A stretch of 38,316 nt of DNA, taken from NCBI GenBank assembly GCA_002189035.1, contig NEEC01000069.1, positions 1 to 38,316 of the forward strand, read 5' to 3'. Within the stretch, counting starts at the first letter, position 1. Each line of letters starts with the position of its first letter. Positions 1,494 through 15,819 of the stretch are shown piece by piece. This stretch comes from Utricularia gibba (Eukaryota; Plantae; Magnoliophyta). Both the position numbers and the translations under genes were made by a program. The notes below the pieces were generated by a model that ran no database searches, was not told the origin of the DNA, and saw only the letters and a program-made list of their open reading frames with translations.

Positions 1494-2517
1494 ATGGCGT
1501 CTGGATTGGTTCGGCGAGCGGCTTCTCGTTCTCCGGTGTTATCGCCCGTAGCGAGAGCGCTGTTTTCTCGGCAGCACACGTCGGAGGCAGAGGCGCAGGT
1601 AGTCGAGCAGAAGGCGAAGGACACGTCTACGCGCAAGGTTTTTCAGATCTATCGGTGGAATCCTGATTCTCCGCAGAAGCCGGAGCTTCGGAACTACGAG
1701 ATTGATCTTAAGGACTGTGGTCCGATGGTTCTCGATGCATTGATCAAGATTAAGAACGAGATCGATCCCACTCTGACCTTCCGTCGCTCCTGCCGGGAGG
1801 GGATTTGCGGTTCGTGCGCTATGAACATCGATGGAAGTAACGGTTTGGCGTGTCTGACGAAAATATCAGCGGGAAGCGAGAGTATGATTACGCCTCTACC
1901 GCATATGTTCGTGATTAAGGATCTGGTGGTGGATATGACCAACTTTTATAATCAGTACAAGTCGATTGAGCCGTGGTTAAAGAGAAAGAATCCACCGGCG
2001 GAGCCAGGGAAGGAAATTCGGCAGAGCAAGGAGGATCGGAAGAAGCTTGATGGGATGTACGAGTGCATTTTGTGTGCCTGCTGTAGCACATCCTGCCCTA
2101 GCTACTGGTGGAATCCCGAGTCTTATTTGGGACCTGCTGCCCTTCTCCATTCGAATAGGTAACTGATTCAGCATATCTCGCGCCAGTCTGTGATTTATTA
2201 TTTGTGGTCGCGAATCCCTGTGCAATTTACTTATAGAGCGTAATTTAAAATTTTTTATATGTGATATATCCAACGTCCGCATCTGCATTTATCCCCATTC
2301 CCTGGACTCTGTAGTTTATCTGTTTCTCCCTTGTTATTGTTGCAGATGGATAATGGATAGTCGTGATGAGTTCACAAAGGAGCGGCTTGATGCAGTGAAT
2401 GACGAATTCAAGCTATACCGGTGTCATACCATTTTGAATTGTGCTAAAGCTTGTCCCAAGGGCCTGAATCCTGGAATGCAAATTCAGAACATCAAGAAAC
2501 TGGAGCTTACATCCTAA
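1494..2517 (+). CDS. SDH2: Mitochondrial succinate dehydrogenase iron-sulfur subunit
   Basis: Exons 1494-2158 and 2346-2517. The protein has an Arg/Ser/Ala-rich targeting peptide and the Fe-S motifs [28 protein letters not shown] and [19 protein letters not shown]. Stop TAA at 2515-2517. Confidence 0.97.
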
Positions 2518-2575
2518 ACAAATGAAATCTCTATTAGAAACTCTTAATAAAAGCTCACCATGGAGAACCTTGCAG

Positions 2576-2668
2576 TGCATGCCCTGGCATGTTCTTCTCT
2601 ATGAGCCCTCTTAGGATCCTTGCTCATGTATACATCATAGATTTATAAGCTCTCATGCACTATGCATG
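2576..2668 (+). promoter_or_regulatory. Cluster of three RY (CATGCA/TGCATG) motifs around a TATA-like site
   Basis: TGCATG at 2576-2581, TTTATAA near 2642-2648, CATGCA at 2654-2659 and TGCATG at 2663-2668, about 170-260 bp upstream of the Cys-rich peptide ATG. Confidence 0.4.
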
Positions 2669-2832
2669 CCTCACTGAATGAAACGATGGCTGTTTTAATA
2701 GATTTTCCGCACCTCTGGTGCATTTGGAATGCATCCCGTGGTGCAATTCTAGTAGCAACCACAGGTTTCGTGTGATCCTTTTGCACGCATATTTATTTGT
2801 GTTTGCAGCTGCGGAATCCCTCTCATCAACGC

Positions 2833-3115
2833 ATGATGCTTCAGCGGATGCTCCTTCCTGGCTCCCTGTTGATTCTCATGGTGCTGCATCATATCCCATC
2901 ACCAACAGACGCCGGAAGGCGAATTCTCGACGAATACATCACGGTGACAGGTGAAGTATTCTCTCGAGTTTCTTCAAGCTTGCTCTTTTTGTGAGGGAGC
3001 CTCATCTGGTTCTCGTTGCGCAGGGTGTCACAATGAGTGCGACGTAGCTTGCTGTTATTGTGATATTACTAGGCAGCCTCCCATCTGCGTGCGCTGCTGT
3101 CAAGGCGATCCATAG
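2833..3115 (+). CDS. Putative small secreted cysteine-rich peptide (69 aa, 2 exons), family not recognised
   Basis: Exon 1 is 2833-2950 (donor G|GTGAAG) and exon 2 is 3024-3115 (acceptor TTGCGCAG|); they join in phase 1. Translation: MMLQRMLLPGSLLILMVLHHIPSPTDAGRRILDEYITVTGCHNECDVACCYCDITRQPPICVRCCQGDP*. It has a hydrophobic N-terminus and 8 Cys in the C-terminal 29 aa. Confidence 0.75.
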
Positions 3116-3998
3116 TCAGAGAGACGGAAGCGAAAGCGGAAGCTTCAACATAATTAATGCAACCATTTCGCATCGTCATGTGCACGTCTCCTCCTGTCCT
3201 CCATCATCATCCCTATCCCCCAATCAAACACCTCATTCTTCCCTAATTTTAAACATGAATTAATACTTTATTATATTATACAAATACATTGCGCCCCGCC
3301 TTGCTGGCGTTCGAACATCAACATCGTACCCACTACCCACCTTCGACCAGTAGAATTCGGCGTGCTCCATTAATTGAAGTTAAATGGTCATCTTTTTCGA
3401 ATTTTAGGGACTTGTAGGTTTCAATGTTTACGATCTTTTGCAATTGAAATTTGTTCACATCAAAACATTTTTACGTAACTAAATACATCATCTATTTCGT
3501 ATAATCTTTTCAAAAATAATTGAAGCATGATATACTCCCTAAGACATGGCCTCCACGAACTGTACACAGATCTAGAAGAATATTCGAATCGGAGGAGTTA
3601 TTTTTTATTAGCACAAAAAGTTGAAGCAGAACTCTTTTCAAGTGTTTGTAATTTAAGAGAAGAAGGCGGGTCTTGAAGTTGTGGGCCAGTTCCTTATCTT
3701 GAGTGTGTAGTCCGCACAGAAACAGTTAGAGGACGCCGTTTCGACTTCCGGTGGGCGAGTTGCAAAACTTGAAGCTGATCCACGTAAGGGATGGCCCCAA
3801 TGGCGTCGCCAAATCAGATTATAGTTTCGTTGCTTCGCATACCGACGAACAAAAGTGAGTCCTCATGCTTATCAACAGCCGCTTGGACCTACAATAATGG
3901 AGAGGGGCACTATTTTGTCATCCTTTTAAAGGCGAAAAGTGCCGCCTCTTCGTTCTCACAAAAGTCCCTTCATTTCCTAAGCGAAGAATACGGGAGAA

Positions 3999-13232: not shown

Positions 13233-14093
13233 ACATTTTTTGAGAGTTCCTCTTATCTGATTTTCAATCATTTTTGAAGCTGACTGCTTTTTCCCCTCAG
13301 TTACTTAATACTACAACAATGGCATTTATTTATTTATTTATTATTTGATGAGAGAGTAGATTCGAAATCAGAATTGGTCAAAATTACTTATTTATTTTAA
13401 ATATCCTAAAAGTGACTGATTTTTTTTTTTAATTTGACCGAGTTTGTGAGTGTTTTGATTCTTTAGTAATTAATTGTGGAGAATAAATTAATTTGAATAA
13501 ATCAGTCAAAACTAATGATAAAAATTATATTCTCATCAATTTTCTAAAGGATTCCACGCGTCTCGCGTCTCGTCCCACGATGACAACCTAATTCCTCTGA
13601 ATTCGCTCTTTTCTTCCGGTTTGGGCGCTATTCGAACGTCTGCGTTCATTTAAGGCGCTTTTTCGGTGGTATTCTGCCACCATTCCGCTGCATTGAGCGT
13701 TTCAAAGGGCAAACCTGTTATTGGATTTGTATGCGCAGCAGAAATAGCGGAGTCCGCTGCCTGATTTCGTGTTCGTTTTTTTTTTTTTTTGTTTGCGTGT
13801 TCGTTCGATGGTTCTCGTATCCATTTATTGCTTTGCCCTTGTGGAGTTCTGTCGTCCGTTACCGTGATTGTTTTTGGGTTTTATCCATTTCGGATTGAGG
13901 ATCTGGTATTTTGGAAAAAGGAGAAAGATTGGAGCCGATTTTTCGTGGTTCATTGGCCGTATGGAAAGGGGTTGCAGCCGAATTGTTCTTTGTTTGAGGG
14001 TTTGGAGTTGAAAATCGGGTCTTTCTAGTGTCATTCTGGCCATCGGTGTAAATTTTGCTCCGTCTTGTTTTTGTCTTTTCAAGTGGGCAAGAT

Positions 14094-15819
14094 ATGGTGG
14101 TACATCTAGAGGAGAATGTGAGTGGGCGGTGTTTAAAGCAGGAACGAAGAGATCCTGAAATAAAGAATTCGGTGAATGGTGAGGATACAAAATTAGATGG
14201 GGATTCCTTCAATTTCGATGATTTGCTGCCTAGCGATCCTTTTGGAATGGAGGTGAGCATAAATTTACCCAACGATTTTACTATAGATTTCAACATCAGT
14301 CTCCCTGTGGATCCTTTTGGGATGGATTTCAGTATAGAGACCACTGTGTCTTCTGTTGGTGATTGGATCAAGGATTTTGGGTTGCAAACATCCCAGAAGG
14401 AGAAAGATAGGGGTACTATTGAAGATGGATTCGAAGATGATGAATGTGTTGCAAAAGTCAATTTTAGTTTGCCTACTCCTGAAGAGGAAATAAAAAATGT
14501 GGTGGTCGATGCTGATTCAATGATGCACGAGGAAGATGAAGCAAGCAGTGATCACAAGTCACTCTCTAGTGAAATGAAGGATTTTATGCTATTTGATTGT
14601 GAAAAGTGTGAACATGACGATAGGAGGAGTTTCAGTTCTGATGAGGAAGGTTCTCAGGTGGATGCTATACTTTTTTCTCTTGGCTATCTTAGCATCAAGG
14701 AGTTGTTTACAGTTGAACGCATTTGCAAGAGATTGAATGATGCTGTTCGGGATAATCCTCCCTTTGGAGAAATATTGCTATTGGCCATCCTTTTTCTGAT
14801 TTGATTACAGATAGTGCTCTTTTGAAACTAACAAATAGAGCTCAGGGTACACTTCACAGCTTGAGCCTTGTGAAGTGTCCGAAAATCACTATTTCTGGTC
14901 TGAGACACGTACTCCAAGCCAATGCACGACTGACCAAGGTCTGACTATGTTTCCAAGATCTCTTTTTTAATGATTACTGTTTCCTTTTCTTTACTTCTTC
15001 CTTTTTTAAATTAAATATATGGAAGGCGCTTTGTGTTTGTCGATGTTGCTGTTACCACATGCCATTCTTAATTTCTTATATCGCTGGTGATGCATGGATT
15101 TAAGAATAATTGGTCATTAATGTTACTACACGTTTTATTTATGAATCGCTTTGCAGATAAGAAGATTTAAAAAATCTTAAGGCTTGTCACCGTTATTATA
15201 TTAGTTTTTCAAGCCTTAGAATTTATTGGAACAAGTTTCATCCTATTTCTACACCAGGATATGTTCTCTAGCGAGGAGTTCTAATATGGTATCTACTTTT
15301 GTGGTGCAGTTAAATGTGGCAGGATGTATGAAACTCACTGTTGGAAGTGTTTATGAGACAATAAAGATCTTCAACTCTGCTGCCCAGCCGGGTATAAAAA
15401 AGTTGAGGATTGGCAACCTAAATGGTTTGACAGAACAGCTCTTCAATGATTTTAAGCTTCTTTTAGGTGATAATGGGAAAAGGCAATGTGAAAACTATAA
15501 ACCAAGATTTTTTCGTGATGGAGAAGTGTATCTTTCCCTGGAAGATGAGCGTGTTATAGACATTGAAATATGTCCAAGATGTCAGCGGCCTAGTCAAGTG
15601 TATGACTGTCCTGCAGAGAACTGCCCAGCCAAGATCAATTCCACCGTCTGCAGAGCTTGCATATGCTGCATTCCTCGATGTGTCCACTGCGGCTGCTGTT
15701 TGGTGGACAGACCATATGTGGAAACCTTTTTTCTGGAGCCACTTTGCATCCCCTGCTGGACCTTAACGGATATGACTTGGGAGTGCCTAGTTTCTGTTTG
15801 TTGCCACATTCAGGGGTGA
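14094..15819 (+). CDS. SKIP14: F-box protein SKIP14-like (F-box, LRR-like region, Cys-rich C-terminus); one apparent -1 frameshift at about 14760
   Basis: Exon 1 (14094-14938) contains LPSDPFGM and the F-box ILFSLGYLSIKELFTVERICKRL. After a 1-nt shift it continues WRNIAIGHPFSDLITDSALLKLTNRAQG. Exon 2 (15310-15819) contains IDIEICPRC..VYDCPAENC..CRACICCIPRCVHCG. Confidence 0.88.

What the first reader, a model, noticed from the sequence alone, without database searches (positions are those of the whole stretch)
2833..3115. Hidden spliced gene for a 69-aa secreted peptide with an unassigned 8-Cys pattern
Seen in sequence: joining 2833-2950 to 3024-3115 across a 73-nt GT-AG intron gives a hydrophobic signal-like N-terminus, a likely cleavage at TDA|G, an RRIL dibasic segment and a domain spaced C-x3-C-x3-CC-x-C-x8-C-x2-CC with a QPP turn. 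The ORF track misses it because of the intron. Established knowledge, as I recall it: this spacing is not that of defensins, nsLTPs, RALFs, EPF/EPFL or snakins. Inference: a four-disulfide signalling, antimicrobial or inhibitor peptide from an unannotated or poorly described family.
Basis: partly seen in the sequence, partly recalled or inferred. Interest (0 to 1): 0.8.

Follow-up and report, generated by a model that had tools for sequence, protein, structure and literature searches.

The report
Unannotated conserved plant cysteine-rich peptide gene

Summary
Exon 1 (2833-2950), a 73-nt GT-AG intron and exon 2 (3024-3115) give the 69-aa product with C-x3-C-x3-CC-x-C-x8-C-x2-CC.

An exhaustive HMMER search with the 30-aa Cys domain, followed by profile searches, found about 65 relatives in eudicots and monocots. 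Nearly all are 67-90 aa "hypothetical proteins". All 8 Cys and one Pro are invariant in 54 aligned sequences.

The residues across the predicted splice (…ITVTG|C…) recur in the clean relatives. Six loci, from rice to Lamiales, have an AG acceptor exactly 2 nt before the first Cys codon. dN is 0.18-0.25 against saturated dS. SDH2→peptide order is kept in Genlisea, Salix and soybean (also seen in Sarracenia).

There is no Pfam match, no fold match, and no mention found in the searchable literature. The exact protein is not in the public collection.

One caveat stands. In the only RNA run of this species that covers the locus, the contigs retain the intron and run on from SDH2, so splicing here rests on comparison, not RNA.

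The function is inferred. AlphaFold2 predicts a β-hairpin whose loop carries [KR]-Q-P-P. I read it as an extracellular ligand first and a protease inhibitor second. It is a real, moderately interesting, unnamed family.

The parts
2833..2950 (+). Exon 1 coding part. It holds the signal peptide (about 2833-2913, 27 aa, predicted cleavage after ...TDA), a short propeptide GRRILDEYITVT, and the first base of the split Gly codon.
   Evidence: The ...Y-I-T-V-T-G motif just before the first Cys recurs in the relatives. AlphaFold2 puts a helix over the N-terminal hydrophobic stretch of the orthologue P0012.
2951..3023 (+). Phase-1 GT-AG intron of 73 nt (donor ACAG|GTGAAG, acceptor TTGCGCAG|GG).
   Evidence: Six loci from other plants have an AG acceptor at the same place, 2 nt before the first Cys codon; in four of them a matching exon 1 with a GT donor gives introns of 97-212 nt. 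In this species the intron is retained in the only RNA-derived contigs over it.
3024..3115 (+). Exon 2 coding part: the 8-Cys domain (Cys codons between 3026 and 3100) and the TAG stop.
   Evidence: It matches relatives at 57-78% identity. All 8 Cys and Pro59 are invariant. It is the only stretch downstream of SDH2 that aligns at DNA level with Genlisea and Handroanthus.
3116..3201 (+). Probable 3' untranslated region. RNA-derived contig cover stops at 3201.
   Evidence: record 3 spans 3018-3201 and depth is zero beyond 3240.
2742..2832 (+). Short spacer between the usual SDH2 transcript ends (2661-2741) and the ATG. It would have to hold the promoter and 5' UTR, and it is covered by the read-through contig in run X1.
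   Evidence: X2, X3 and X7 contigs end at 2741, 2725 and 2661, while X1 record 1 runs on to 3017. A TATTTAT stretch lies near 2791 (read by eye; function not tested).

Best explanation
This is a real protein-coding gene of two exons that the public protein collection does not hold. It encodes a 69-aa prepropeptide made of a cleavable signal peptide, a short propeptide and a C-terminal 30-aa domain with eight invariant cysteines. It belongs to an unnamed, low-copy family found across flowering plants, both monocots and eudicots. In eudicots the gene sits in a conserved block just downstream of the SDH2 (succinate dehydrogenase iron-sulfur subunit) gene. The likely mechanism is inferred, not shown. 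The peptide would enter the secretory pathway and fold into a β-hairpin (strands CCYCD and ICVRC) locked by four disulfides. The hairpin displays a rigid loop, I-x-[K/R]-Q-P-P. I expect it to act outside the cell by binding a conserved protein partner through that loop. A receptor is the most likely partner (a signalling ligand like EPF or stomagen); a protease is the second choice. Shown here: the gene structure, conservation, purifying selection and synteny. Inferred: secretion, disulfide bonding, ligand function, and splicing in this particular species.
For: The structure is in the sequence. An exhaustive phmmer search with window:3023-3112 gave 10 true relatives, E 7e-7 to 7e-4, and the domain is C-terminal or within 20 residues of the C-terminus in every one. 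Profile searches gave 60 and 27 hits across Lamiales, Solanales, rosids, Caryophyllales, Ranunculales, Poales and Alismatales. The 8 Cys plus one Pro are invariant in 41-54 sequences. Spliced-type relatives carry the same junction residues...TVTG-C.... An AG acceptor lies 2 nt before the first Cys codon in all six loci checked, and a matching exon 1 with a GT donor was found in four of them. dN is 0.18-0.25 with dS saturated. Only exon 2 aligns at DNA level downstream of SDH2. Gene order is SDH2 - peptide - ATP12 in Salix and soybean and SDH2 - peptide in Genlisea, and Handroanthus keeps the peptide gene although no SDH2 is called there. AlphaFold2 on the domain gave mean pLDDT 79.7, with strands 10-14 and 21-25 around the loop. 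The domain carries a net charge of about -2, counted from the sequence. Loop position 17 is K or R in 47 of 54 sequences. Low copy number and high conservation fit a ligand better than a fast-evolving defence peptide.
Against: No spliced RNA was seen in this species. In the one run that covers the locus, contigs 2344-3017 and 3018-3201 retain the intron and are continuous with the spliced SDH2 mRNA, and none of the other RNA runs found held it (share 0.00 in six; no cover past 2741 in X2, X3 and X7). Contigs show presence, not absence. The propeptide here is about 10 residues shorter than in the relatives and lacks their R-L-P-F-L motif. No receptor, expression pattern, mass-spectrometry or disulfide evidence exists. 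Fold searches found nothing. The full-length model has low confidence (pLDDT 63).
Confidence: 0.85

Rival explanations
1. The peptide is a standard-mechanism serine-protease inhibitor. The disulfide-closed hairpin loop would present K/R as the P1 residue, followed by Q-P-P, in the manner of Bowman-Birk inhibitors and sunflower SFTI-1.
For: The loop is C-D-I-x-[KR]-Q-P-P-[LVI]-C, closed by two invariant Cys at the tip of a predicted β-hairpin. If K/R is taken as P1, the invariant Pro falls at P3', where Bowman-Birk inhibitors have their Pro. UniRef's automatic name for the Salix viminalis member is 'Bowman-Birk ... domain-containing protein'. The rare replacements at position 17 (T, L, A, I, Q, V) include residues that I recall serving as P1 in some Bowman-Birk inhibitors.
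Against: The canonical loop is nine residues, C-T-P1-S-X-P-P-X-C (PMC7760496). Here it is ten residues, with no Thr at P2 and no Ser at P1'. No Pfam Bowman-Birk match appears at E<=10, even for the Salix protein. No Bowman-Birk chain appears in the PDB profile search. Defence inhibitors are usually abundant, multi-copy and hypervariable at P1, whereas this family is low-copy with P1 87% K/R.
Confidence: 0.22
2. The peptide is a secreted antimicrobial peptide, a hepcidin-like disulfide-laddered hairpin.
For: It is a small secreted 8-Cys hairpin. The language-model search listed a hepcidin-like cluster at score 0.76. That is a lead only.
Against: The domain is acidic or neutral, not cationic (counted from the sequence; consensus). 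The family is low-copy and strongly conserved rather than expanded and fast-evolving. A score of 0.76 is in the range that shuffled proteins reach.
Confidence: 0.08
3. In this species the stretch is not an independently expressed, spliced gene. It is transcribed only as an unspliced read-through tail of SDH2, so it is an intact relic or an unused copy while a paralogue does the work.
For:: the only cover is continuous with SDH2 mRNA and retains the intron. Only about 90-170 nt separate the SDH2 poly(A) sites from the ATG. The propeptide is shortened. An earlier unchecked note (s1-277571) reports a second copy elsewhere in the genome.
Against: The ORF, both splice sites, all 9 invariant residues and the nearly invariant ones are intact, and every substitution in the domain is one also seen in other members. 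Contigs cannot show that a minor spliced form is absent. Cover stops at 3201, about 85 nt past the stop codon, as a proper 3' end would. Intron-reading products for this family are common elsewhere: a Logan contig product (P0005) and deposited gene models (P0008, P0009, P0059, P0063).
Confidence: 0.12
4. The protein is a membrane-anchored mini-protein that binds a metal or a 2Fe-2S cluster through a CDGSH-like site in which the His ligand is replaced by Cys. It would not be a disulfide peptide.
For: The only PDB profile hits are two CDGSH proteins, 3tbn and 6avj/CISD3. As I recall the CDGSH motif, C-x-C-x2-[ST]-x3-P-x-C-D-G-[SAT]-H, the register C50-x-C52-x8(P59-x)-C61-x3-C65 matches it residue for residue, with Cys in place of His. 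The gene is linked to the Fe-S subunit gene SDH2 in four eudicot orders.
Against: The E-values of 1.1 and 1.9 are at chance level, and the two hits are homologues of each other, so they count once. No Pfam zf-CDGSH match appears. The protein ends 3-5 residues after the last Cys, so the rest of the NEET fold has no room. The N-terminus looks like a cleavable signal peptide (short hydrophobic core...V-Q-A|S), which would lead to a compartment where, as far as I know, Fe-S clusters are not assembled. Four further invariant Cys would be left unexplained. In eukaryotes gene order is not evidence of shared function, and rice lacks the linkage.
Confidence: 0.04

Closest known systems
Deposited 'hypothetical proteins' of the same unnamed family, e.g. 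Handroanthus impetiginosus PIN07020.1 (P0004), Erythranthe guttata ABFS82_08G004600 (P0012), Solanum lycopersicum A0A3Q7FC06 (P0014), Glycine max AAZX31_16G061600 (P0029), Oryza sativa DAI22_05g101500 (P0055), Spirodela intermedia CAA6659636.1 (P0011)
   Same: They share the signal peptide, the propeptide ending ...Y-[IV]-T-[IV]-T-G, and the C-terminal C-x3-C-x3-CC-x-C-x8-C-x2-CC domain with invariant Pro. They share the phase-1 intron before the first Cys. In eudicots they share the position downstream of SDH2.
   Different: The window's copy has a propeptide about 10 residues shorter (GRRILDE instead of ...RLPFLINPQxLxPSQ). It has His at domain position 3, a residue seen in only 3 of the 54 aligned sequences, Genlisea among them. 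It is not in the public protein collection.
Bowman-Birk inhibitors and SFTI-1
   Same: Both have a disulfide-closed, Pro-Pro-containing β-hairpin loop with a basic residue, and CC/CxC-rich scaffolds.
   Different: The loop here is 10 residues, not 9. It lacks Thr at P2 and Ser at P1', and the Cys framework differs. No HMM match was found.
ESF1 / PCP-B class cysteine-rich proteins (Brassicaceae embryo surrounding factor 1, pollen coat protein B)
   Same: Both are secreted 8-Cys plant peptides. UniRef's automatic names call four members 'Embryo surrounding factor 1 brassicaceae domain-containing'.
   Different: ESF1 and PCP-B are described as an α-helix plus a three-stranded β-sheet, with a conserved aromatic residue after a Cys (PMC5215366). 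Here a 30-aa domain is predicted as a plain β-hairpin with no helix. No Pfam match appears for any member, including the four so named. No PDB or Swiss-Prot fold match was found.
EPF/EPFL/stomagen-type secreted cysteine-rich ligands
   Same: This is the working analogy only: a signal peptide, a propeptide and a C-terminal disulfide-locked β scaffold that presents a loop, with low copy number and deep conservation.
   Different: The Cys spacing differs and there is no sequence or HMM similarity. No receptor is known.
Hepcidin (animal 8-Cys hairpin hormone)
   Same: By my recollection of the hepcidin sequence, both are 8 Cys in about 25 residues with CC-x-C and C-x2-CC elements, forming a β-hairpin with a disulfide ladder. 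There is a language-model lead at 0.76.
   Different: The resemblance is convergent at best, from a different kingdom. The score lies within the range of chance, and no alignment exists.

Membership tests
Unnamed pan-angiosperm 8-Cys prepropeptide family (this report) | C-terminal domain C-x3-C-x3-CC-x-C-x8-C-x2-CC with an invariant Pro two residues before the sixth Cys | tested here: met
   all nine invariant columns are present in the window's product.
Unnamed pan-angiosperm 8-Cys prepropeptide family (this report) | Significant sequence similarity to other members | tested here: met
   E 7e-7 to 7e-4 with a 30-aa query against 1.84 billion proteins, at 57-78% identity.
Unnamed pan-angiosperm 8-Cys prepropeptide family (this report) | Phase-1 intron splitting the codon just before the first Cys | tested here: met
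   the AG acceptor position is identical in the window and six other loci. Spliced RNA in this species was not observed.
Unnamed pan-angiosperm 8-Cys prepropeptide family (this report) | N-terminal signal peptide | tested here: inconclusive
   The hydrophobic core and small residues at -3/-1 were read from the sequence. A helix is predicted for the orthologue. No signal-peptide predictor was available.
Unnamed pan-angiosperm 8-Cys prepropeptide family (this report) | Eudicot position immediately downstream of SDH2 | tested here: met
   window; Genlisea; Salix; Sarracenia; soybean.
Bowman-Birk inhibitors | Nine-residue reactive loop C-T-P1-S-X-P-P-X-C | tested here: not met
   The loop here is C-D-I-T-R-Q-P-P-I-C, ten residues with no Thr-P1-Ser. 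The motif definition is from PMC7760496.
Bowman-Birk inhibitors | Match to the Pfam Bowman-Birk model | tested here: not met
   no Pfam match at E<=10 in 46 members.
Bowman-Birk inhibitors | Protease inhibition | not testable with these tools
   This needs an enzyme assay.
ESF1 / PCP-B | Match to the Pfam ESF1 domain or to a solved ESF1 structure | tested here: not met
   Searches found no Pfam match, even for members that UniRef names ESF1. Searches found no PDB or Swiss-Prot match.
ESF1 / PCP-B | Cysteine-stabilised α-helix plus three-stranded β-sheet | tested here: not met
   predicts two strands and no helix (pLDDT 79.7). The fold definition is from PMC5215366. This is a prediction only.
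CDGSH iron-sulfur domain (NEET proteins) | Motif C-X-C-X2-[ST]-X3-P-X-C-D-G-[SAT]-H with 3Cys-1His ligation | tested here: not met
   The spacing and the Pro match, but D-G-[SAT]-H is V-R-C-C here. The PDB hits have E of 1.1 and 1.9 only. No Pfam match appears. The motif itself is recalled from established knowledge.
Defensins, nsLTPs, snakins/GASA, RALFs, EPF/EPFL, thionins, knottins | Match to the family's Pfam model | tested here: not met
   no such family matched any member at E<=10.

The most novel reading that the evidence does not exclude
The invariant C-x-C-x8(P-x)-C-x3-C core is a CDGSH-type 2Fe-2S or metal site with all-Cys ligation. It would sit in a tiny N-terminally anchored protein that has stayed next to the Fe-S subunit gene SDH2 since before rosids and asterids split. 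That would make it a new minimal NEET-like redox or metal protein rather than a disulfide peptide.
Probability: 0.04. Interest if true: 0.85.

Novelty: new variant of a known kind. Interest (0 to 1): 0.5.

Why it matters
Secreted cysteine-rich peptides are a well-known kind of plant gene, but the conserved, low-copy ones have mostly turned out to be developmental ligands such as EPFs, TPD1 or ESF1.

This family keeps 60-80% identity in its 30-aa core from duckweed and rice to tomato and soybean. It has no Pfam model and no name, and I found no paper on it.

No Brassicaceae member appeared in any search. If that absence is real, it would explain why Arabidopsis genetics never met the family.

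That makes it a concrete candidate orphan ligand, or a regulator of an endogenous protease, and it can be tested directly in crops.

The result also shows how often annotation fails on this family. The gene is missing here, and it is mis-built or fused to neighbouring genes in Genlisea, Rehmannia and Sarracenia.

Tried and rejected
- **Word-index search with the 69-aa product:** blank. The blank is unreliable, because P0004 shares many 5-residue words with the query yet was not found.
- **Pfam:** scanned the window's product, 41 family members, and the five members that UniRef names ESF1 or Bowman-Birk. Only scattered single chance matches appeared.
- **PDB sequence profile:** only chance-level CDGSH hits.
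- **Fold searches:** Foldseek against PDB twice, AlphaFold DB Swiss-Prot, and VIA-align wide. No matches, which is expected for a 30-aa model and is no evidence of a new fold.
- **Protein atlas:** generic small Cys-rich clusters, plus the family's own two unnamed Streptophyta clusters.
- **Literature:** Utricularia plus cysteine-rich peptides, six orthologue locus tags, and five family motif strings such as CCYCDI all returned nothing. The PCP-B paper's supplement lists counts of 'PCP-B-like' genes in Mimulus and Sesamum but no sequences, so I could not tell whether they are this family.
- **Tandem paralogues in the window:** a regular-expression scan of all six frames found only this copy.
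- **Earlier scan notes by sequence or place:** blank.
only the Arg column is conserved across the family. Relatives have R-L-P-F-L there, so I do not rely on it.
- **Chance ORF:** rejected on conservation.
- **Exon 2 as an alternative last exon of SDH2, as in the Sarracenia model P0002:** rejected as the main reading, because Handroanthus keeps the peptide gene with no SDH2 called and rice has it elsewhere.

Full report
**1. The observation**

- Exon 1 (2833-2950) translates to a 39-residue stretch plus one base of a split codon.
- The intron starts GT at 2951 and ends AG at 3023.
- Exon 2 (3024-3115) gives Gly, then CHNECDVACCYCDITRQPPICVRCCQGDP and a stop.
- Without splicing, the exon-1 frame stops inside the intron (ORF 2797-2994).
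- The N-terminus has a basic residue, a 13-residue hydrophobic core and small residues at -3/-1 (T-D-A).
- A stop-free 26-codon window here holds 9 Cys. Block shuffles of the window reached 8 once in 100 and never 9.
- A six-frame scan found no second copy in the window.

**2. Setting**

The gene lies 316 nt after the stop codon of a succinate dehydrogenase iron-sulfur subunit gene (SDH2). SDH2 occupies exons 1494-2162 and 2344-2517 and matches Fer2_3 at E 3e-33. The neighbours are:
- upstream, on the minus strand, a NOI/RIN4-type gene (AvrRpt-cleavage domain);
- downstream, a PQ-loop (cystinosin-like) gene and a PGAP1-like gene.

**3. RNA evidence in this species**

Only one of the RNA runs found holds the locus (X1). 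When laid on 2300-3700, X1 gives two contigs:
- a 1352-nt contig that is spliced onto the upstream SDH2 exon at 2344 and then runs unbroken to 3017;
- a 184-nt contig covering 3018-3201.

No joint was reported, so the intron is present in the assembled RNA. In X2, X3 and X7 the SDH2 contigs end at 2741, 2725 and 2661, which are the normal SDH2 3' ends.

These are assembler contigs, which drop minor forms, so a spliced mRNA is not excluded. Cover ends about 85 nt after the stop codon, as a 3' end would.

**4. Relatives**

The word-index search with the 69-aa product was blank. Later results show that this blank was a miss.

An exhaustive phmmer search with the 30-aa domain (window:3023-3112) against 1.84 billion representatives gave 11 hits at E<=0.001. 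Ten are clear relatives, with 57-78% identity over the whole domain, and the domain lies at or within 20 residues of their C-terminus.
- Four are clean 67-80-aa prepropeptides: Handroanthus, Rumex, Rhynchospora and Spirodela. Their sequence runs ...[YH]-[IV]-[TVS]-[VI]-[TSK]-G-C-N-N..., the same residues that the predicted splice joins here.
- Profile searches raised the family to about 65 proteins. They come from Lamiales, Solanales, Apiales, Fabales, Rosales, Fagales, Malpighiales, Malvales, Sapindales, Myrtales, Saxifragales, Caryophyllales, Ranunculales, Poales and Alismatales.
- Nearly all are "hypothetical" or "uncharacterized".
- No Brassicaceae protein appeared. This is absence of evidence only.

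In alignments of 41 to 54 sequences, all eight Cys and Pro59 are invariant. Gly40, Ile54 and Pro58 are nearly so. Every substitution in the window's domain is one that other members also show. The exact product is not in the 15-billion-protein collection.

**5. Gene structure and selection**

I fetched six loci: Handroanthus, Genlisea aurea, Salix, rice, Sarracenia and soybean.
- All have an AG acceptor exactly 2 nt before the first Cys codon. In four of them a matching exon 1 ending ...TVTG-like with a GT donor gives introns of 97-212 nt.
- In Genlisea the true exon 1 begins M-M-L-R-K-R-G..., much like M-M-L-Q-R-M... here. The GenBank model EPS71790 misses it.
- Downstream of SDH2, only exon 2 aligns at DNA level with Genlisea (71%) and Handroanthus (74%). 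The intron and flanks do not align.
- For the domain, dN is 0.18-0.25 while dS is saturated or above 1.3. That indicates strong purifying selection on the protein.

**6. Synteny**

The order SDH2 → peptide holds in Genlisea. The order SDH2 → peptide → ATP12 holds in Salix and soybean. Sarracenia has NOI followed by a model that fuses SDH2 to the peptide. Handroanthus has NOI … peptide → ATP12 → PQ-loop, with no SDH2 called and only a 15-codon trace of it.

The block therefore predates the rosid-asterid split, and the peptide gene persists where SDH2 is gone. It is not merely an SDH2 tail. Rice has the gene in another setting. From memory, not tested: the Arabidopsis order At5g40645 (NOI), At5g40650 (SDH2-2), At5g40660 (ATP12), At5g40670 (PQ-loop) is the same block without a known peptide gene.

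**7. What it is not**

- *Pfam.* No member matches any Pfam-A family beyond single chance hits. That holds even for the five members whose UniRef names say ESF1 or Bowman-Birk.
- *Bowman-Birk.* The canonical loop is C-T-P1-S-X-P-P-X-C (PMC7760496). The loop here is one residue longer and lacks Thr and Ser.
- *ESF1/PCP-B.* These are described as a helix plus a three-stranded sheet (PMC5215366). The domain here is predicted as a bare hairpin.
- *PDB profile search.* It gave only two CDGSH iron-sulfur proteins, at E 1.1 and 1.9. The motif register is striking: C-x-C-x8 with Pro, then C-x3-C in place of C-x3-H. It is still statistically chance-level and fits poorly with a cleavable signal peptide. 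I keep it as the novel case at 4%.

**8. Structure**

- AlphaFold2 on the family alignment, with the Erythranthe protein first, gave pLDDT 63 and a helix over the signal peptide.
- On the domain alone, with the window's sequence first and 54 rows, it gave pLDDT 79.7. Strands fall at residues 10-14 (CCYCD) and 21-25 (ICVRC), around the loop I-T-R-Q-P-P.
- In that register Cys13/Cys22 and Cys10/Cys25 face each other. This is my inference, since no coordinates were available.
- Fold searches returned nothing. For 30 residues that is uninformative.

**9. Mechanism**

*Shown:* a conserved, selected, two-exon gene for a small protein with a signal-like N-terminus and an invariant 8-Cys C-terminal domain.

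*Inferred:* secretion, four disulfides, and a rigid hairpin that presents [KR]-Q-P-P.

The family is low-copy and deeply conserved. The domain is slightly acidic, and in this species the locus was held by a single RNA run. I therefore favour an extracellular signalling ligand (about 0.45 of the total). A protease inhibitor comes next (0.22), then an antimicrobial peptide (0.08) and a metal or Fe-S protein (0.04). About 0.12 goes to the view that this particular copy is an unexpressed relic.

**10. Novelty and verdict**

The kind of gene is known: plant secreted cysteine-rich peptides. This family has no name, no model and no paper that I could find. The window's member is unannotated.

An earlier unchecked note of this scan (s1-277571) reports a similar hidden gene, with an x7 loop, on another piece of the same genome, so the scan has met this family before. 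Another note (s1-219312) guesses that the genome is from a bladderwort relative. That fits the closest match being Genlisea, with SDH2 exons at 81-87% DNA identity and a shared His at domain position 3.

Interest is moderate, at 0.5.

Noticed in passing
window 2344-2484: RNA runs X1, X3 and X7 each hold a second SDH2 contig with 13 differences over these 141 bases. Its word depth (55-76) is higher than that of the window's own copy (17-20). This points to a diverged, more highly expressed SDH2 paralogue elsewhere in the genome.
   Followed up: no
window 3201-3990: The ATP12 gene that lies between the peptide gene and the PQ-loop gene in Handroanthus, and after the peptide gene in Salix and soybean, has no trace here by tblastx. 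The block has lost it.
   Followed up: partly
L002 1433-1882 (Genlisea aurea KE527802.1): The GenBank model EPS71790.1 (P0003, 124 aa) reads a wrong frame upstream. The real exon 1 (M-M-L-R-K-R-G... to ...Q-Y-I-T-V-R, ending at 1671) and a 119-nt intron give a normal family member.
   Followed up: yes
P0001 (Rehmannia KAK6155249.1), P0002 (Sarracenia KAL6960486.1 'Sdh2-1p'), P0026 (Salix 'Succinate dehydrogenase'): Deposited models fuse or mislabel this peptide gene. One is a 507-aa chimera of a CCCH zinc-finger protein, an antisense reading of the NOI gene and the peptide. Another joins the SDH2 last exon to the Cys exon. A third is a 74-aa family member named succinate dehydrogenase.
   Followed up: partly
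L001 3978-6001 (Handroanthus): No SDH2 gene is called between the NOI gene and the peptide gene, and tblastx finds only a 15-codon trace. SDH2 seems lost from this copy of the block while the peptide gene stays intact.
   Followed up: partly
window 2797-2809: The stretch tttgtgtttgcag, 24 nt before the ATG, looks like a strong splice acceptor. No spliced contig uses it in the runs examined.
   Followed up: no
window 15592-15678 (+) and 14975-15052 (+): Two other stop-free stretches hold 6 Cys in 26 codons. The enclosing ORFs (14055-14801 and 15226-15816) have no Pfam match.
   Followed up: no
P0056, P0065, P0066 (Erythranthe tilingii and E. nasuta, chromosome 11): Monkeyflowers carry a second, more diverged locus, with two adjacent family genes in E. 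tilingii (11G064600 and 11G064700), besides the SDH2-type copy on chromosome 8.
   Followed up: no
The word-index protein search returned nothing for the 69-aa query, although P0004 shares at least nine 5-residue words with it and is within the length range. A blank from that tool can be a miss even for close relatives.
   Followed up: partly
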